This document shows positions 50,129-58,561 of a stretch of DNA of 64,000 nucleotides, one piece after another. The DNA comes from Pocillopora damicornis (Eukaryota): NCBI RefSeq assembly GCF_003704095.1, contig NW_020845647.1, forward strand, positions 496,001-560,000, written 5' to 3'. Within the stretch, counting starts at the first letter, position 1, and the number at the start of each line of letters is the position of its first letter. A program made the position numbers and the translations under genes. The notes under the pieces were generated by a model. The model was not told the origin of the DNA. It saw only the letters and a list, made by a program, of their open reading frames with translations, and ran no database searches.

Positions 50129-50203
50129 TTTGAAAGCTTTCTTCAGCTATCCATCCAAGCCTTATCACTACGAGCGGCTACTAAGCGTAATTCAAAATGG
50201 CGG
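50122..50203. promoter_or_regulatory. Ultra-compact PRMT5/PYURF bidirectional start region
   Basis: ATGs at 50128 (-) and 50197 (+), 68 bp apart, both in the identical context TTCAAAATGGCGG (YY1/TISU-like). Confidence 0.75.
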
Positions 50204-51570
50204 GAGCTTCGCTTTGGGGAATCACATTCAAGAATATTCCAAAGAAACCAGTTTCTTTCATTCACATCGCATCTTGTCGATGCTTTAGCGTAGGGAAGCA
50301 ACGGAGACATCAAGATAATACCCAGTTCGACCAAAAGTTGTTAAAGATCTTAGTTTGTCCATTGACAAAGAAGCCATTGAGGTGTGTAATTGAATCATTG
50401 CAGTGAAAAGTTAAACTCCCTTCGAGTATAAAGAACCTAGCGGATTAAGAACCTGATGCCAGGAATTTTCCAGTTTAATACCGAACATCAAAAGAACCTG
50501 TTTAGCTAAGTAAGGTCAACCAGGTTCTTATATATGTGGGTTACAGCTTAGTTCAGTTACGTGAAACATTTCAACCAAAGACTTTGACTTTGAGATTTCT
50601 AATAATTGATATTCAAAATTAGTAACAAACTATAACTGCTATTAAAAGTAATATTTTCTCAAACAAAACGAGATCATGTCAAGTACAGACTTTATCTCTT
50701 TCGTACAATTCAAGTCTAATTAAGAACCGACTCAGACTGAAAAAGGTGTAGGTTCTTACACACAAGTTTAATTAATACAATACACGAAGATATGCCAAAC
50801 AAAACTTTTCTCATTACACACCTGGATGTCTATGGCCTCTGGTCCAAGCTTCGTGGAGAAATCCTTCGTTAATATGATAGATGCAGTAGAACCCTGCTAA
50901 CTCAAACTCAGTTAACTTAAACCCCCATGTAACTCAAACAAGATCTGTTTTCCCTTGAAGCCATCTCTTCAGTCATTTACTGTCAACAAGCTGAAACCCT
51001 CACTGACTCAAAGCATTTTTTTGTTTTCCTTGGGGGTTTGAGTTAGCAGGGTTCTACTGAAAATTGCTATATTCTTTGGTTTTTGTTATTGGATGCTTTT
51101 TGGTGTGATGCTGAAGTGTCCTGTATTCAAGTCAAAGAATTATCAAAACTATGTTAGGCCAGAAATTGTTGTGGCCCTCGTCTTTTACATCAGTTGATTA
51201 ATTGCTTATGATTCCCAACCCTTCATTGGTGAGTGCAGGAGCAGGAAGTCAAATACTTGGTTGATCAAACCACAAAGATTTATCAGTTTACCAATCAATA
51301 CAGTCGGCTTAAATTCATGTTAGAAATTCTCTTCCTTTATTCCAAGGAACTCAGGGTAAGAGAGCTGTGATTTAATTTATTGGCAATTTATTTATGGTTG
51401 ATTATTTATTACCCAGGTATGACAATGCAAGAAATGAGCTGATTTCTGATGACATTGGAGTTGCATATTCAATACAAAATGGTATTCCAAATTTAATACC
51501 TCATGATGGACGGCTCATTAAAAAAGACAACACAACATTAAGTGTGAATGAATCAAACCAAGACTCATGA
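50197..51570 (+). CDS. PYURF: Protein preY, mitochondrial (Trm112-like), 2 exons, 112 aa
   Basis: Exons 50197-50381 and 51417-51570 (phase 2). A basic presequence-like N-terminus, then FDQKLLKILVCPLTKKPLR|YDNARNELISDDIGVAYSIQNGIPNLIPHDGR. Confidence 0.92.
50884..51059. mobile_element. Pogo/Tigger-like MITE in PYURF intron
   Basis: Perfect 24-bp terminal inverted repeats CAGTAGAACCCTGCTAACTCAAAC / GTTTGAGTTAGCAGGGTTCTACTG. Confidence 0.8.
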
Positions 51571-52500: not shown

Positions 52501-52706
52501 TAACCTTCTATAACCTATGATCAGATCTATATTCTCCACACTCCTCTTCTTACATTTCCATTGGTACTGACAAGGAGAATTTGTTTATCAATCAAAGCTT
52601 CTTAAGTTGGTGATCATTTCCTTTATTCTCCTGATTTAAATGAAGATTTAGCAGTATTATGGTGAGGAGAAATTAGACTCTGGTCACTCAGGATTTCAAG
52701 GGTTAA
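52501..52706. mobile_element. TTAA-type MITE
   Basis: TAACCTT...CTGACAAGGAGAATTTGTTT...GGAGAAATTAGA...AAGGGTTAA; same family as 34042 and 41137. Confidence 0.65.
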
Positions 52707-52821
52707 GAAAAAATAGAAATTGCTTATCAAATGAACATAGTATGTTTGCATGGCAACAATACTTGCCGCCATTTGTAGGAGATAGCAGAGAGAGAGAGGT
52801 TGGAACTAATTTAACTCTGAT

Positions 52822-55800
52822 TTAACTTCTAGTGAAGTCATCTGCCAATATATCATCAAGATGTGCAATATAGTTGATAGCATACTTCAGTATTTTTATC
52901 TTTGGTAGCTTTGTGTCACATTGATACCCTGGAATCAACTGTCTGAGATCTTGGTAAGCACTATTCAATTGTGCAACTCTCCTACGCTCATGCTCATTTG
53001 CTAAGAGCCTGTTCAGTTTTGTCCTTTGCCTACCCTTCATTTGATAATCCTCCTTTCCTTGCTTCCAGTCTTCCTCTTCTTCAGCTAGAACAAAATCATT
53101 GCTGTAAGTTCTTGGCCGGCGAGATGTCACTACCCTTGTGTTATATGGCTTTGTGTTACTGTCCCTGGATCCCTTCTTTGATTTTGTCTGTGGTATCTTT
53201 TTTGCTTCATGGTTAGATGCTTTTCTTTTAACCTCTGCAGATTGTTTTTTGTGCTTTTTGTGGTTGGTCAACCCATCTTTTTCTTGACAAGTTTGTTCAA
53301 ACTCTTCATATTTATTAGTTTTTCTTTGGGAGAGTAGAACATCACCACACACAATAGTCTCTGACTCTGGGGACTCTTGTTTAATTTTTTCTCTAGGAGG
53401 TGAATCATCAAGCTTTGTTTTTTCCGTAGTAGAATCCATCCCAGTTTTATGTTCATGATTTAAACTCTTTTTACTGTCCTCCTTTGTCAACATGTCATTG
53501 CTTTTAACAGGTGTCAGTTTTATTTTCTTTGTTGGAAGTTCTTTCCTGATTTCATCTTTATCCTCCTTCAAAGCAGCATTTGGAAACACCTCTACTTCTT
53601 CTGTCTTAACAAATTTTGGGTTGTTCTCTAATCTCACACCAAACATGGTACTGCAGTTACCAACATGAACTGAGGTTAAGTTGTCATCTACCTTATCATT
53701 TTCTTCTATTATATGAACATCAAGTCTTTCCACTGGACAGGACAATGGTTTGGAACTAAATGGACCAAATTGATGTGAGAAAATCCCATTACAGCCACTG
53801 TCATAATTCATGTTCCTATGCCATAGAGGTACTTGCAGTTGTGTAACATTTGTGAGAAATTTTTGGGATGTCAAACAGCACAAACAACTCGAAGGTTCTC
53901 CAAGTTTTCCGTGAAAATACCCACAACAATGAGTATTGACACACTCAGAGGCACATTTAACCCAAGCTTCTGGTGTTTCTGGGAAAGTTCCTGGTCTGTT
54001 TAACAAGCATGCAGCATTTGTGTGATCCCAGTGGTGTTTTCTTCCCAGTGTGTTGTAAGGAAAATGTTGTGGATGAAATTGCGTGGTCTGACAGGAAGGT
54101 ACAAATTTTTCTTTCTCTTCTGAGCTGTTGGAAGGATCTCGGGTTTTTTCAGTGACATCTGGGGGGTCAAAATAAAATATATTTATAAATGATTGTGTAA
54201 CTTCTCTGTATGAAACTCATGATTCCAACAAGATTTTAAAAAATTATAGATTTTGAACAAGAGGCTGGGTCTTAACATTATTAGTCATTAATTGATGTTT
54301 CCCTGGAAATTGTTTCACCATTATCAGAGGATACTCAATTCCAAATAGTCCCTCAGACCTGGAAAATTCCTTTTCTAGATTTATTTCAATGTTATTTTTC
54401 TCTCCTACAATTATTATTGAGTTTAACTTTATTATTTCTTGTTTGGCACAGATGCTCATTTTATTTGCTTAACTTAATTTTTGCCCTGATTACCCTATGT
54501 GTTAAGAGTGAATTTCCCATTATGCACGCACTGTGTGCCTACAAGGGCGTGCCTAGATGGGGGAGGGCGTGGTCTAGGCGTGATGGGAGTTGCTGAGAAT
54601 TCAGTTCCTGCAACATTTCTCTGCAATTTCTTTCTTCCCAATAAGTAGGAGGAACCTGACACAAATTAACACGACTCTTGTAAGATCCAATTTTTGCAAA
54701 ATGCTATGACTACCAAACATTTATCTAAATCGCAAAAAACTTTTTAAATCGATTATTGGACTCTCTTCGATCTTTGATAATCAACTTTTTGGTGGTAACC
54801 TTGAATGTATTTGAAGTATTCTTATCTCGTACCCAGATTCTACTGTGTACCTGTAACTGAAATGTAGACTTGGCTGTGGAAGGCTTGGGGTATCCTTATC
54901 ACAAAGAGGGTCTCAATGGGGTTAACCGTAAGTCATAAAAAAAAGTTAACCGTAAAAGAAAATTATAGTAACCGTAAGCCGTAAAATGGCCACAATTTTA
55001 ACCGTTTGCCGTAAAAGCCATCACACTTTTGCGACCCTCCACAAAGCTAAGGATATGTCAACCTGGTTCCGTGATCACAGTGATGCGCGAAACATACTTT
55101 GCGTTCCCTAGCGTGAAAAAGAAACCACAGCTGCATGCGTACGAATTGAGCGATACGGGCGTGTTTTCAAACATCCGTAATCGTTCTTTTTTCCTTTGAA
55201 CAAGTCAATCAGGTGGAGGATCAAGGCAATAGAGGATTTAATTAAACTACGAAAAAAACCTGCCCTTGAAAAAAATTTGAGAGGTTTTCTTTTTTTTCCT
55301 TTTCAATTCCCTGGTATGAACAGCAATCCTCTGAAATCGATTGTTAATCTGGCACCGGGTCAAAACAGAAGATATTAAACATCTTCAACAGAACAGGATA
55401 AGAAATTTTTTGCTTTGCAGGCGGTCGGAAATTGTTTTTGAATGTAGCATATGCAAATCTCACTGTACAAACAACACACAGGTACATGATAAGGTCGCCA
55501 GAGAAATTTACTCTTATCGGAGATGATTTCCATCGATCGCCTGTCTCGTATTTTTACGAGGCTACAGTTACAATTGAAGGTAGTCCTGGTAATCTAACGC
55601 TATCGCCGGGTCTGAGGTTTTCTGAATTTAACCTTTTCCTAAAAAAAAACTTTCACTTCTCGATCATGAAATCTAAACATCAGATATTAATAACTTAATT
55701 CTTCGACAAAATATATTTGAAAAAAAAAAAGATTGCCCGTCTTGCTGCTGGTTAGAAGTGCATATAAATGAGTTTTAAAAAAATCTGAGATCGCTTCTTC

Positions 55801-58394
55801 AGAGAAAGTCTAACCATTATGATCAACATGTTATTGGCAACTCAACACACGCGAGATTTCCTGTAATGAAAACAGCTTCTTAGAATACCAGATGGAAATA
55901 AAACGCCGGCAGGGTGAACTGTAAGACGAACCATCTGGACGAAGCAGTTCTCTATTGTTCTTTTACTGTGAATACTGAACTGGTTTGGGTTTTAGAGGCC
56001 AATTGTCTGCCTAAACGACTTGTTAACTAATAGCAATAAAAAGATTTGGTTGCTTAAAGAACCCATTTCAATACCAGAAAGCCATTTAAAATGCGGATAA
56101 AAACCCAGCTGTTTTCGTTTGTAGTTCCTTATCAAAAAATATAAAATTCTTGTCATTGTTGATCAATGGCTGTTTTCACTGACCCAGTTCACCTTTTAAA
56201 CCGATGCGGCATCGGAGATCACACGAAAAATCGATTTTCCATCTGTTATAGCATCGTTTCCCTGTGCCTACTTAAAACGCTTTGTGCGTTCAAACAATCT
56301 ACGAATTAGAAGAAGGAACACGTTCACAGTAAGAATGGTTTCCCAGTAGCACAGTTGTTGCAGCCTGTCTTCCCAAATGTGAAGAAAAATCGGATTTTTT
56401 TCCCTTGACTTTTCGCTCTTAACATGAATACAATATGACATGTTAAACCCATCTTTTAAAAAATTTCCCTTTATTGGTGACTTTCCACAATCTTTCAAAA
56501 CTTGAATAGTACGTTGAGGAAAACAACGAGAAAGTTCCTTTCACAATGCGTCATTGGATGAAATTCAACATGAGAAACAACACCGCTTTCTGAGTGATTC
56601 AATAAAATATTTTTTATTGTTTAATAAAGCCTAAGCATGAACATCTGTTCAGATAAGAATACATCTTCAACGGCCAACAAAAATTATTTATTTTGCATTT
56701 AAATTTTCCTTGGAAGAAAGAAACACCTATGTTTTCCGGTCAAAATTGAACAGGTTTTCTCAGAAAATATTGACGAAAATTGTCACTGTGATAAAACCCC
56801 TTTGCAATTCTTATCTTCGAAGGTTTTGGACAATTTTGAGTCAAGGTTTTCGAGTAAATGTCATCTATTGAAAACTTAAATTAACATAGCAAATAAAACA
56901 TTGTCATTCAATCGTATTTCTCCGATGTCCTCTTCATTTGAAAACGAAAATTTGCTTTTATTCCATTACCAACATCATTAGCAAGCTCCTTAATGTCTAT
57001 CCTTGGTACATTAACATATCATAAATACGAGGTAAAAGTCGCAAAGCGTTGATTTTTACAACGTTTACTCGAAATTTGTGTTTATCATTCAACACATAAC
57101 AAATCTCGCAGAAAAGAAATACACACACAGCGGCGCGTATTCACTGATACTGAACTGTCCGCGAATAAATTTCATATCTATTCGCTTTTCCGATAGATAT
57201 TTTTTAGAAAAATCCCGCGGTAAAAGGCGTGAGCCAGGATACTGGGTAGCTGTCGCCGTTGATATCGACACCATTGCACTCGAATTTCATCCCATTTTAT
57301 TAAAATTTGTGCCTTTTTCGATTGTTGCCGCTAGAAAACACATGTCACTGTAGAGCAGTGTTGCTTCGAGCCGAGCCGCGGGCATACAACCCCCTGCATG
57401 GTCCATTTAATATTTCCCGCGCAACTTACCGCTTTAATTTTTTTTCTTGTCGCGAAAGTCCCGCTCGGTTTATTAACAAATTTAGACGCTTTTTCGCTCA
57501 GCAATTTCGGAAATTCTGTCTTCCTTTGGACTACTTTTTCTCGGCTTCTTTTTGTTGCTATTTATGGGACTACAATTCAATCCCTCCATGAACAGCTGTG
57601 AAATTAAGGTTTCATCTGTTTACAGAACCGTTTTAATTTATGGCTAAATTCATAAAACAACATTTCCATTGCTTTTCGCGTTGAAGTTGCTAGGGATCAA
57701 TCATTTCTAGCGATCGAGGGCTCTAGTTTTTTGTTTTATTTTTCGCAAAAATAGAATGCCGAATTTCACACAATGTCGACTCTCTTATTGTAGCTGTGAG
57801 ATTTAAAATAGAAAATAACCACCGGGTCCGGCGCATTTTGAAAACATCTGCCAAACGTCTCCCAGGTGTGTGTATATTAAAATTACTGTTACTTGCAAAA
57901 GTGCTAATAAGAAAACCACCGTCCTGAAGATTTCTAGAAAATCTAAAAATCACTTTCAGTGCCTAGCAAACCGTATAAATGCCCGTTTTCTGGGGTGCAA
58001 AACCATGGATGAATATCACACAAATATGGTCTGGTACTTTAACTGATGAAATTTCCCCAATAGAGGGAAATAATGACAGCGTAGGCAAGTCGGAAAACTT
58101 GAATTAATTAAAGCAATCCCTTCTCTTGAAGTACAATCCTACCAGAATTGCGAGGCTTTGGTGATTTCACATCGTATCACCGGGTGGACGTTAAAATTGA
58201 GAAGCCGACCGTGCATGTTGACATTTGAACTATCCCAATCGACCGACCAAGAACTGCGAACTGTATATCTTCGTTCGAGAACACGTGTGGATTTAAGAGA
58301 GAAAATAGTCAAGTTGACTCGCTAACTTACCGGAATCGAGCGTGGAATTTGCATCGGCGCTCTTTCGTCTTTTCACAAGAAACGAGCGAGGCAT
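52822..58394 (-). CDS. Group A bHLH transcription factor with N-terminal SNAG motif, 2 exons, 466 aa
   Basis: Exon 1, 58394-58331, encodes MPRSFLVKRRKSADANSTLDS plus G|GTAAGT (phase 1). Exon 2, 54158-52822, follows TTTTATTTTGACCCCCCAG| and is open with phase 1 (G+AT=Asp). C-terminal bHLH RLLANEHERRRVAQLNSAYQDLRQLIP...KLPKIKILKYAINYIAHLDDIL (about 53010-52846). The ORF-track start at 54006 is a TTG. The bHLH exon is near certain; the join is inferred. Confidence 0.85.
54906..55039. mobile_element. 134-bp MITE with 6-bp target-site duplication
   Basis: Inverted ends GAGGGTCTCAA / TTGCGACCCTC, flanked by CACAAA at 54900-54905 and 55040-55045; internal AACCGTAA repeats. Confidence 0.75.
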
Positions 58395-58499
58395 GATCGC
58401 CGGCGAGAATAAACTTGTGGGCCTTATTGACGACCCGTCTCTAGCACAGCTTGCTTCAATCTTGGTTACAGACGATAGCGCTCAGAATTCAAGGTCTTC

Positions 58500-58561
58500 G
58501 ACGTCAGATATAAATAAACTCACGGAGCCTCACTTTGACACATGGGACCAGCAACTTCCGG
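58500..58561 (-). promoter_or_regulatory. Candidate core promoter of the SNAG exon
   Basis: Minus strand: ETS-type CCGGAAGT (58561-58554), TATA-like TATTTATA (about 58516-58509), TGACGT; no ATG between this and the SNAG ATG. Confidence 0.5.

What the first reader, a model, noticed from the sequence alone, without database searches (positions are those of the whole stretch)
52822..58394. SNAG-bHLH fusion: a Snail/Gfi-type LSD1-recruiting motif on a bHLH transcription factor
Seen: a 64-nt exon below the ORF-track threshold encodes MPRSFLVKRRK from the first ATG downstream of a TATA-like and ETS-bearing promoter, and ends in a consensus G|GTAAGT donor in phase 1. The large bHLH exon has no nearby in-frame ATG and begins at a phase-1 acceptor (54158); joining them gives an uninterrupted 466-aa protein. 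I see no zinc-finger or homeobox exon in the intervening 4172 bp. Known: SNAG (MPRSFLVK) must be at the extreme N-terminus, mimics the histone H3 tail and docks in LSD1/KDM1A-CoREST. It is described on C2H2 factors (Snail, Scratch, Gfi1, Insm, Ovol) and Gsx homeoproteins, whereas bHLH repressors normally use WRPW/Groucho or Sin3 motifs. I know no described SNAG-bHLH, but cannot search. Inference: exon shuffling produced a dimeric E-box-binding repressor (ERRR intact, atypical ANEHE basic region) that could pull E-proteins into an LSD1 complex and converge on the same CANNTG sites as Snail.
Basis: partly seen in the sequence, partly recalled or inferred. Interest (0 to 1): 0.92.

Follow-up and report, generated by a model that had tools for sequence, protein, structure and literature searches.

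The report
Conserved cnidarian SNAG-motif bHLH gene
A coral gene really does splice a tiny first exon encoding the Snail/Gfi-type "SNAG" repressor hook (MPRSFLVK) onto a bHLH DNA-binding factor; this undescribed combination is conserved across corals and sea anemones and appears in some jellyfish-lineage relatives, so it is a candidate recruiter of the LSD1-CoREST chromatin silencer.

Summary
On the minus strand, a 64-nt coding exon (58394-58331, MPRSFLVKRRKSADANSTLDS, phase-1 G|GTAAGT donor) joins exon 2 (54158-52825), which ends in a Pfam HLH domain. Transcript contigs from four RNA studies carry exactly this junction.

- **Same architecture elsewhere:** annotated proteins of Pocillopora meandrina (466 aa, 98% identical), Montipora, Desmophyllum and Nematostella have it. 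So do four unnamed genomic loci, each with an upstream MPRSFLVK exon ending in phase 1.
- **Family limits:** a profile search of 1.84 billion proteins gives 14 representatives, then generic bHLHs.
- **Sister clade (96/86 support):** the medusozoan "Atl1" group. Hydractinia isoform X1 starts MPKSFLLRRK and another locus has MPRTFLVKK, both in phase 1. Clytia shows no such exon within 10 kb.
- **Prior record:** the Nematostella orthologue was catalogued in 2007 as the orphan bHLH "Nem22 ?(Hand)". I found no paper describing a SNAG-bHLH.

LSD1 binding, repression and E-box binding remain inference. Residues 2-7 equal PRSFLV, a hexapeptide sufficient for LSD1 binding. The basic region is atypical (ANEHERRR) but invariant. 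The fusion is ancient, not a recent coral event. I rate it a new variant of a known kind, of moderately high interest.

The parts
58395..58500 (-). 5' UTR (minimum extent). The transcription start is not resolved.
   Evidence: Spliced contigs reach 58465 (X5) and 58461 (X9). The X13 contig reaches 58500 and runs over the end of the laid stretch. An in-frame stop lies 29 codons before the ATG.
58331..58394 (-). Coding exon 1, 64 nt: MPRSFLVKRRKSADANSTLDS plus the first base of a split codon. This is the SNAG motif. The donor is G|GTAAGT, phase 1.
   Evidence: The same N-terminus is in P0001, P0028, P0029 and P0031. Upstream exons of loci L003, L007, L008 and L009 also encode it.
54159..58330 (-). 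Intron 1, 4172 nt, GT..AG.
   Evidence: The joint 54158<->58331 appears in contigs of 4 RNA runs from 4 studies.
58217..58287 (-). Conserved block at the start of intron 1. It holds the E-box-type sequences CACGTG (58287-58282) and CAAATG(TCAAC) (58227-58217).
   Evidence: The alignment of window, L008 and L009 keeps ACACGTG and AAATGTCA while the flanks diverge. A regulatory role is inferred only.
52825..54158 (-). Coding exon 2, with a phase-1 acceptor (ccccccag|AT). It encodes 444 residues plus the split codon. The stop TAA is at 52824-52822.
   Evidence: Contiguous RNA contigs cover 52700-54158.
53857..54012 (-). Cys/His-rich stretch (CLLNRPG...HCCGYFHGK...SSCLCCLTS). The CxCC here corresponds to the CxCxxC motifs of anemone-type and Atl1-type relatives.
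   Evidence: Alignment A1 has C113 nearly invariant. AF2 predicts no fold here (pLDDT<50).
53134..53145 (-). Invariant YNTR motif, within KPYNTRxxTSRPRTYSxDFV upstream of the bHLH.
   Evidence: Y360, N361, T362 and R363 are invariant in 14 sequences. Its function is unknown.
52858..53010 (-). bHLH domain: basic region NRLLANEHERRRV, helix 1, loop GYQCDTKLP, helix 2.
   Evidence: Pfam PF00010 at 61.2 bits. AF2 predicts helices 402-429 and 441-464. The nearest solved structures are TAL1, NeuroD1 and Twist1, E about 1e-8.
52700..52821 (-). 3' UTR (minimum extent).
   Evidence: RNA contigs are continuous from exon 2 to at least 52700.

Best explanation
This is a real two-exon gene of a Pocillopora-type coral. 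It encodes a 466-aa transcription factor with three parts:
- a SNAG motif at the extreme N-terminus (MPRSFLVKRRK);
- a long, mostly disordered and poorly conserved linker, which carries a Cys-rich patch and an invariant YNTR motif;
- a C-terminal group-A bHLH domain.

It belongs to a sharply delimited cnidarian bHLH family (Nematostella 'Nem22'). The medusozoan sister group of that family is the Atl1 clade. The SNAG exon is ancestral to the anthozoan family and probably to both clades.

Proposed mechanism (inferred):
1. After removal of the initiator Met, the free Pro-Arg-Ser-Phe-Leu-Val N-terminus mimics the histone H3 tail and docks in the catalytic cleft of Lsd1/KDM1A in the Lsd1-CoREST-HDAC complex.
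2. The bHLH dimer binds E-box-type sites.
3. The protein therefore acts as a sequence-specific repressor that brings H3K4 demethylase and deacetylase activity to its targets.

What is shown: gene structure, transcription, splice junction, conservation and phylogenetic position. What is inferred: Lsd1 binding, repression, DNA specificity and dimer partner.

The confidence of 0.58 is for the whole statement including the inferred mechanism. The gene model and architecture alone I put at about 0.97, and conservation across Anthozoa with an Atl1 sister clade at about 0.8.
For: Gene model:
- The sequence fits the model.
- The exact splice joint is present in 4 RNA runs of 4 studies.
- A 466-aa NCBI protein of P. 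meandrina is 98% identical and has the same start.

Conservation of the architecture:
- MPRSFLVKR plus the same bHLH occurs in annotated proteins of Montipora, Desmophyllum and Nematostella.
- All 4 unnamed genomic loci tested have an MPRSFLVK(R)(R/Q)(K/R) exon 3-7 kb upstream on the same strand. Each ends in a phase-1 GT donor.
- The rest of the N-terminal 350 residues is only about 26-50% identical, so the motif is under strong selection.

Family bounds and sister clade:
- The profile search gives 14 representatives at E<=1e-47, then a gap to about 1e-12.
- In the careful tree the family has 97/97 support, the Atl1 clade 100/97, and the two together form an exclusive clade at 96/86.
- The CxCxxC motif is shared by the family and Atl1 and is absent from 120 other bHLH hits.
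- Hydractinia isoform X1 starts MPKSFLLRRK on a phase-1 exon.
- Locus L020 has an MPRTFLVKK exon with a phase-compatible acceptor.

Mechanism plausibility:
- Residues 2-7 are identical to PRSFLV. That hexapeptide suffices to bind LSD1, with P1 and R2 crucial. SNAIL1 and INSM1 SNAG peptides bind with Ki about 0.2 uM (PMC5453194).
- A vertebrate-like Lsd1-CoREST-HDAC complex exists in Nematostella (PMC9400249).
- Hydrozoan Atl1-type proteins carry an Eh1-like FxVDxLL motif. By my recollection of the Eh1 consensus, this points to co-repressor recruitment in the wider clade.
Against: - No binding, repression or DNA-binding data exist for any member.
- The basic region has His at position 8 and Glu at position 7 (ANEHERRR) where group A normally has Arg at position 8, so canonical E-box binding is not assured.
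- Clytia (L024) and a related locus (L025) show no SNAG-like exon within 10 kb. Hydractinia also has an isoform without it. The motif is therefore dispensable in part of the clade.
- The published NvLsd1 IP-MS text and the held supplements mention no HLH protein.
- SNAG motifs also bind other partners in vertebrates.
- The tree rests on 66 columns, and the bootstrap had not fully converged.
Confidence: 0.58

Rival explanations
1. The gene and architecture are as above, but the conserved N-terminal MPRSFLVK serves another purpose. It could dock other SNAG partners, act as a nuclear or nucleolar targeting element, or act as a stability element. The protein would then work as an ordinary group-A bHLH activator together with an E-protein.
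For: - NvSNAIL work links the SNAG region to nucleolar localisation rather than nuclear import (PMC4507178).
- Most group-A bHLHs are activators (established knowledge).
- No HLH protein is mentioned in the NvLsd1 interactome text or the held supplements.
Against: - The motif is identical over 8 residues to Gfi/Snail-type SNAG, including the PRSFLV hexapeptide that suffices for LSD1 binding.
- It sits at the obligatory extreme N-terminus in every orthologue.
- The planula-stage IP could simply miss a rare, cell-type-restricted factor.
Confidence: 0.2
2. The protein is a non-DNA-binding or altered-specificity HLH. It sequesters E-proteins or other bHLHs (Id-like titration), and the SNAG adds repression only when tethered through partners.
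For: The basic region is atypical, with His8 and Glu7 in ANEHERRR. ID proteins appear among the weaker PDB hits.
Against: - E9 and R10-R12 are intact.
- The whole basic region, plus the upstream basic run (GRQRTKLNR), is invariant across >14 divergent sequences. That argues for a constrained DNA-contacting surface.
- The best PDB hits are DNA-binding group-A factors: TAL1, NeuroD1 and Twist1.
Confidence: 0.12
3. Gene-model artefact: the SNAG exon belongs to a neighbouring or nested Snail/Gfi-type zinc-finger gene, and the bHLH exon starts at its internal Met.
For: None remains. Only ORF-style calls (Logan/ENA) start the protein at internal Mets, and a hydrozoan isoform X2 lacks the exon.
Against: - The exact junction is present in 4 independent RNA data sets, and no alternative joint leaves exon 1.
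- 115 codons of open frame lie upstream of the first internal ATG.
- There is no zinc-finger ORF in the intron.
- The same exon pair occurs in 8 other anthozoan-type records.
Confidence: 0.02

Closest known systems
SNAG-domain zinc-finger repressors (Snail/Slug, Scratch, Gfi1/1b, Insm1)
   Same: - The extreme N-terminal motif MPRSFLVK is identical and includes the LSD1-binding hexapeptide PRSFLV.
- In this same genome the Gfi-like gene (L006) and a second C2H2 gene (L004) also encode the motif on a short first coding exon ending in phase 1. The Gfi-like exon also has 64 coding nt.
   Different: The DNA-binding domain is a dimeric bHLH rather than C2H2 fingers. There are no zinc fingers anywhere in the transcript.
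Nematostella vectensis 'Nem22' (jgi|Nemve1|199398), orphan bHLH '? (Hand)' of Simionato et al. 2007
   Same: It is the orthologue. The bHLH domain is nearly identical, and the full-length NCBI protein P0031 starts MPRSFLVKRGK.
   Different: It was catalogued by bHLH domain only. The SNAG motif and full-length architecture are not mentioned in that catalogue.
Medusozoan Atl1 (Podocoryna carnea Atonal-like 1, AAQ75377; Hydractinia LOC130662751; Clytia homologue)
   Same: - Its bHLH forms the sister clade (96/86).
- It has the same long N-terminal region with a C-terminal bHLH.
- It shares the CxCxxC motif.
- A SNAG-like phase-1 first exon is present in Hydractinia X1 and in L020.
   Different: - The basic region is ANLLERRRVAELN.
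- It has an extra conserved C-terminal tail (DPLIQKCREHM..KIF).
- Hydrozoans carry an Eh1-like motif.
- The SNAG is variant (MPKSFLLRR), optional as an isoform, or not found (Clytia).
Hand family bHLH
   Same: It shares the loop and helix-2 signature DTKL(S/P)KIK(T/I)LK. Hand-like proteins are among the best non-family hits.
   Different: - The gene does not group with Hand in the trees.
- The genome has better Hand-like loci on contig C2150.
- Nematostella has a separate Hand, Nem21.
- The protein ends right after helix 2 and has no Hand-type C-terminal tail.
bHLH repressors using other co-repressor motifs (Hes/Hey WRPW-Groucho)
   Same: The logic is the same: a short linear co-repressor-docking motif appended to a bHLH.
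   Different: The motif differs (N-terminal H3-tail mimic versus C-terminal WRPW). The presumed co-repressor differs (Lsd1-CoREST versus Groucho). The bHLH group differs (A versus E).

Membership tests
SNAG-motif repressors | The motif lies at the extreme N-terminus, directly after the initiator Met, with Pro at position 2. | tested here: met
   The ATG at 58394 is the first in-frame ATG after a stop 29 codons upstream. The protein starts MPRSF.
SNAG-motif repressors | Core sequence P-R-S-F-L-V-[KR]. | tested here: met
   Residues 2-8 are PRSFLVK. They match the PRSFLV hexapeptide reported as sufficient for LSD1 binding (PMC5453194).
SNAG-motif repressors | The motif is conserved in orthologues. 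| tested here: met
   It is present in 4 annotated proteins and 4 genomic loci of the anthozoan family, and in 2 loci of the sister clade. It was not found in Clytia or L025.
SNAG-motif repressors | Binds LSD1/KDM1A-CoREST and represses transcription. | not testable with these tools
   No cnidarian LSD1 sequence could be obtained for a complex prediction. No experimental data were found.
Classical Snail/Gfi (SNAG) zinc-finger family | C-terminal C2H2 zinc-finger DNA-binding domain. | tested here: not met
   Pfam finds only HLH in exon 2. There is no zinc-finger ORF in the intron. RNA joins exon 1 directly to the bHLH exon.
bHLH superfamily, group A | HLH domain above the Pfam threshold, with two helices. 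| tested here: met
   PF00010 scores 61.2 bits against a cut-off of 20.7. AF2 predicts helices 402-429 and 441-464. The best PDB matches are TAL1, NeuroD1 and Twist1.
bHLH superfamily, group A | Canonical basic region (R8, E9, R10, R12) for E-box binding. | tested here: inconclusive
   E9 and R10-R12 are present. Position 8 is His and position 7 is Glu, both invariant in the family. DNA binding was not tested.
Hand family | Groups with Hand orthologues in phylogeny and is the best Hand-like locus of the genome. | tested here: not met
   It falls in a separate clade. Two better Hand-like loci lie on C2150. Simionato 2007 lists it as '? (Hand)' with low support and names Nem21 as Hand.
Cnidarian Atl1 clade | Atl1-type bHLH (ANLLERRRVAELN) plus a conserved post-bHLH tail. 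| tested here: not met
   It is sister to that clade, not inside it. The window protein ends 10 residues after helix 2 and has no tail.
pearl / amber / peridot bHLH families (Gyoja 2012) | Orthology with the Acropora founders, and the presence of mollusc/annelid (pearl, amber) or cephalochordate/hemichordate (peridot) orthologues. | tested here: inconclusive
   The defining paper is not held. Pearl is group D and amber is NeuroD-like, so both are unlikely. The exhaustive search found no close non-cnidarian relative, which argues against peridot without excluding it.

The most novel reading that the evidence does not exclude
The SNAG-bHLH/Atl1 clade is an ancient, cnidarian-wide, DNA-sequence-specific recruiter of the Lsd1-CoREST-HDAC complex. 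It would be the missing transcription factor that explains the cell-autonomous requirement for Lsd1 in differentiation of the neural and cnidocyte lineage. Its SNAG exon was exchanged with Gfi/Snail-type genes by 5'-exon shuffling before the Anthozoa-Medusozoa split.
Probability: 0.15. Interest if true: 0.85.

Novelty: new variant of a known kind. Interest (0 to 1): 0.62.

Why it matters
SNAG is the textbook LSD1-CoREST hook. Finding it fixed for several hundred million years on a bHLH factor has three consequences:
- The hook is a portable module that evolution attached to a second major class of DNA-binding domain.
- It provides a concrete, testable candidate for how Lsd1-CoREST is targeted in cnidarians. 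The complex is conserved there and is needed for cnidocyte differentiation (PMC9400249, PMC8786827), but no recruiting factor is known.
- It gives an identity to an 'orphan' bHLH family (Nem22, Atl1) that domain-only surveys could not classify.

Within the clade, SNAG is lost or optional and an Eh1-like motif is present in hydrozoans. That makes the clade a natural experiment in the swapping of co-repressor motifs.

Tried and rejected
- **Joined 466-aa model:** Exons were searched by reference, and the database protein P0001 (98% identical) served as the full-length stand-in.
- **Short-query homology search:** the 130-aa C-terminal piece found only one fragment. No short bilaterian bHLH shares words with it.
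- **Earlier scan notes:** none for this place.
- **Rfam and tRNA scans of the intron:** nothing. The high-depth spot at 54904-55024 is a dispersed repeat.
- **AF2 of the full-length protein with a 14-row alignment:** only the bHLH is confident, and no fold appears for the Cys-rich region. No fold search was therefore run.
- **Complex prediction with LSD1:** not run. No cnidarian LSD1 protein could be obtained.
- **SNAG exon in other medusozoan loci:** none within 10 kb in Clytia (L024) or L025. The Tara metagenome contigs of the P0066 group (L017-L019) have only 1.2-2 kb upstream, so they are uninformative.
- **Taxon names for the ENA/Logan records:** not obtainable.
- **Gyoja 2012 (pearl/amber/peridot):** not held.
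- **NvLsd1 IP-MS paper and held supplements:** no HLH protein mentioned.
- **Hand orthology:** rejected.
- **Gene-model artefact:** rejected.

Full report
**1. Observation**

On the minus strand the sequence reads ...gcgatcATGcctcgctcgtttcttgtgaaaagacgaaag...gattccG|gtaagt.
- The ATG is at 58394 and the last exon base is at 58331, giving 64 nt. The translation is MPRSFLVKRRKSADANSTLDS plus one base.
- In the same frame a stop lies 29 codons upstream with no ATG in between. The protein therefore begins Met-Pro-Arg.
- The large exon begins after ttttgaccccccag at 54158. Read from 54156, it is open for 444 codons to the TAA at 52824-52822.
- That frame is closed by TGA at 54219-54217, and the first internal ATG is about 116 codons in. 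An upstream coding exon in phase 1 is therefore needed.
- Pfam finds one domain, HLH, at 61.2 bits against a cut-off of 20.7, at the C-terminus.
- ORFs inside the intron show nothing like a zinc finger or homeobox.

**2. Is the junction real?**

One public-run search found RNA libraries from ten studies that hold parts of the stretch. I laid four runs from four studies on 52700-58500.
- Each contains a contig with the joint 54158<->58331 (skips 4172; CT..AC on the + strand, i.e. GT..AG). The shorter side has 135, 30, 62 and 131 nt.
- No other joint leaves exon 1.
- Spliced contigs reach 58465 and 58461. One contig runs beyond 58500, so the 5' UTR is at least about 70-100 nt.
- These are contigs, not reads, so the transcription start, the strand and the expression level are not shown.

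**3. Orthologues**

Exon 2 by reference found 41 proteins.
- The best is a 466-aa 'unnamed protein product' of Pocillopora meandrina. It is 98% identical and starts MPRSFLVKRRKSADAKSTLDSD. The genome is therefore a close Pocillopora relative (234.35 Mb in 4393 contigs).
- All four proteins from eukaryote-style NCBI annotations begin MPRSFLVKR and end in the same bHLH: Pocillopora, Montipora capricornis, Desmophyllum pertusum and Nematostella vectensis.
- The other hits are ORF-style calls from Logan/ENA contigs and start at internal or spurious Mets.
- I fetched four long genomic contigs behind such calls (L003, L007, L008, L009). All four have an MPRSFLVK(R)(R/Q)(K/R) exon 3.3-7 kb upstream on the same strand. 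Each ends after 17-23 codons in a phase-1 GT donor.
- In the alignment, the SNAG motif, a Cys-rich patch, an invariant YNTR motif and the bHLH are conserved. The remaining roughly 300 residues are not.
- AF2 predicts only the two bHLH helices with confidence.

**4. Limits of the family and its relatives**

A profile of 14 members was scored against 1.84 billion representative proteins.
- It gives 14 family representatives at E<=1e-47 (plus P0044, an N-terminal fragment, at 2e-23). A gap then follows to generic bHLHs at about 1e-12. The family is sharply bounded.
- The ESM Atlas places the Nematostella protein in a 51-member cluster whose known taxa are Cnidaria.
- The best outside hits are Hand-like proteins and a group that includes Podocoryna carnea 'Atl1' and Hydractinia symbiolongicarpus LOC130662751.
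- Hydractinia isoform X1 starts MPKSFLLRRKREEN. Its first exon ends in a phase-1 donor. Isoform X2 lacks that exon.
- Another Atl1-type locus (L020) has an MPRTFLVKK exon 2 kb upstream with a phase-1 donor and a phase-compatible acceptor.
- Clytia hemisphaerica (L024) and L025 have no such exon within 10 kb.

bHLH-domain trees agree with this grouping.
- The quick tree (163 rows) makes the anthozoan family (SH-aLRT 92) sister to the Atl1 clade, with the joint node at 81.
- The careful tree (94 rows) gives 97/97 for the family, 100/97 for Atl1, and 96/86 for an exclusive clade of the two.
- Caveat: the trees rest on 66 columns, and the bootstrap was not fully converged.

Independent support comes from short motifs.
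- A CxCxxC motif occurs one to three times in anemone-type members, in some other unnamed anthozoan-type members, and in every full-length Atl1-type protein. It occurs in 0 of 120 other bHLH hits. In Pocillopora it is reduced to CxCC.
- Hydrozoan Atl1-type proteins additionally carry an FxVDxLL motif. From my knowledge of the Eh1/Groucho-binding consensus (FSIDNIL) it looks like a second co-repressor motif. This is a lead, not a test.

**5. What is it not?**

- It is not the Hand orthologue. The genome has two better Hand-like loci, and the trees separate them.
- Simionato et al. 2007 list the Nematostella orthologue as 'Nem22 ? (Hand)', 'with low statistical support', next to a bona fide Hand, Nem21.
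- Pearl is group D, and amber is NeuroD-like with mollusc and annelid orthologues. Neither fits.
- Peridot is said to have cephalochordate and hemichordate orthologues. It could not be tested because the defining paper is not held. No non-cnidarian close relative appeared in the exhaustive search.

**6. Mechanism**

Shown: a transcribed, conserved protein with an exposed N-terminal MPRSFLVK and a C-terminal group-A bHLH.

Supporting the proposed mechanism, but not shown for this protein:
- The review PMC5453194 reports that the first nine SNAG residues occupy the LSD1 catalytic cavity as an H3-tail mimic.
- It also reports that the hexapeptide PRSFLV suffices (Ki 28 uM) with P1 and R2 crucial, and that SNAIL1 and INSM1 SNAG peptides bind at about 0.2 uM.
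- Residues 2-7 here are PRSFLV.
- A vertebrate-like Lsd1-CoREST-HDAC1/2 complex exists in Nematostella (PMC9400249). NvLsd1 is required cell-autonomously for cnidocyte differentiation (PMC8786827).

I therefore commit to a SNAG-dependent, Lsd1-CoREST-recruiting bHLH repressor as the most likely mode of action, at about 0.55-0.6.

Unknowns:
- DNA specificity. His8 and Glu7 in ANEHERRR are atypical but invariant.
- The dimer partner.
- The target cell type.

Podocoryna Atl1 is reported as upregulated in transdifferentiating cells (PMC8156412). The original 2004 paper is not held.

**7. Origin**

The genome holds only three exact ATG-MPRSFLVK exons. They belong to this gene, a Gfi-like six-finger gene (L006) and a second gene with eight C2H2 fingers (L004).
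- All three are short first coding exons ending in a phase-1 donor.
- The Gfi-like exon has the same 64 coding nt.
It does not exclude convergence.
- Either way the event is ancient: at least the common ancestor of Scleractinia and Actiniaria, and probably of Anthozoa and Medusozoa.

**8. Novelty and verdict**

- Ten literature searches found no description of a SNAG motif on a bHLH (among them). The library lacks most subscription papers.
- The proteins exist in databases as 'uncharacterised' or 'predicted'.
- The bHLH domain alone was catalogued in 2007, and an Atl1 fragment was described in 2004.
- The finding is a real, conserved, undescribed domain combination, a new variant of a known kind, with a clear and testable mechanistic hypothesis.
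- Interest is 0.62.

Noticed in passing
window 54904-55024 (inside intron 1): RNA contigs pile up here (depth up to 74) with many loose ends. The stretch, rich in aaccgtaa units, is a dispersed repeat with 46 scored matches out of 307 candidates across the genome. It is not an Rfam family or a tRNA.
   Followed up: yes
window 58287-58282 and 58227-58217 (start of intron 1); L008, L009: The E-box-type sequences CACGTG and CAAATG(TCAAC) are conserved at the same positions after the exon-1 donor in the window, L008 and (in part) L009, while neighbouring intron sequence diverges. They could form an intronic enhancer or an autoregulatory site.
   Followed up: partly
window about 58400-58500: In run X1 the depth over the 5' UTR and promoter-proximal stretch (about 29-44) is several-fold higher than over exon 2 (7.4). 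The responsible contig was not listed. It could be an overlapping or antisense transcript or a repeat.
   Followed up: no
window 58543-58520 (minus strand): A short upstream ORF (ATG TGT CAA AGT GAG GCT CCG TGA) would lie in the 5' UTR if transcripts start upstream of about 58545, as one contig that runs past 58500 suggests.
   Followed up: no
window 50197-50406 and 51394-51570 (+ strand): These ORFs look like Trm112-type exons (…LLKILVCPLTKKPLR…, …GIPNLIP…), convergent with the bHLH gene. Locus L009 also has a (weak) Trm112p call convergent downstream of its bHLH gene, which suggests conserved synteny.
   Followed up: no
L003 17167-17877, L007 12848-13639, L008 19432-20148: A CSRNP_N-domain gene lies a few kb downstream of the SNAG-bHLH gene in three unnamed cnidarian-type contigs. 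I did not check whether the window has it too.
   Followed up: no
L004 (G000:C1653:109870-109893, minus) and L006 (G000:C3420:14507-14530, plus): These are the only other exact MPRSFLVK start exons in the genome. They belong to an 8-finger C2H2 gene and a Gfi-like 6-finger gene. Both SNAG exons end in phase-1 donors, and the Gfi-like exon is also 64 coding nt long.
   Followed up: partly
P0053, P0063/P0200, P0066, P0068, P0071, P0083, P0084, P0129, P0207-P0209, P0211 (hydrozoan Atl1-type proteins): These proteins carry a conserved Eh1-like motif (NSFHVDNLLAE, RFDVDSLLAE or FSVDKLLSE) near the N-terminus. The motif is absent from the anthozoan family. Clytia-type genes keep it but show no SNAG exon within 10 kb, which hints at co-repressor-motif turnover within the clade.
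   Followed up: partly
L021 (G000:C1417:423501-423731): The best SWIRM-domain hit in the genome sits in a MYSM1-like ORF (SWIRM followed by a JAMM/MPN-like exon), not in LSD1. The LSD1 locus itself was not pinned down.
   Followed up: no
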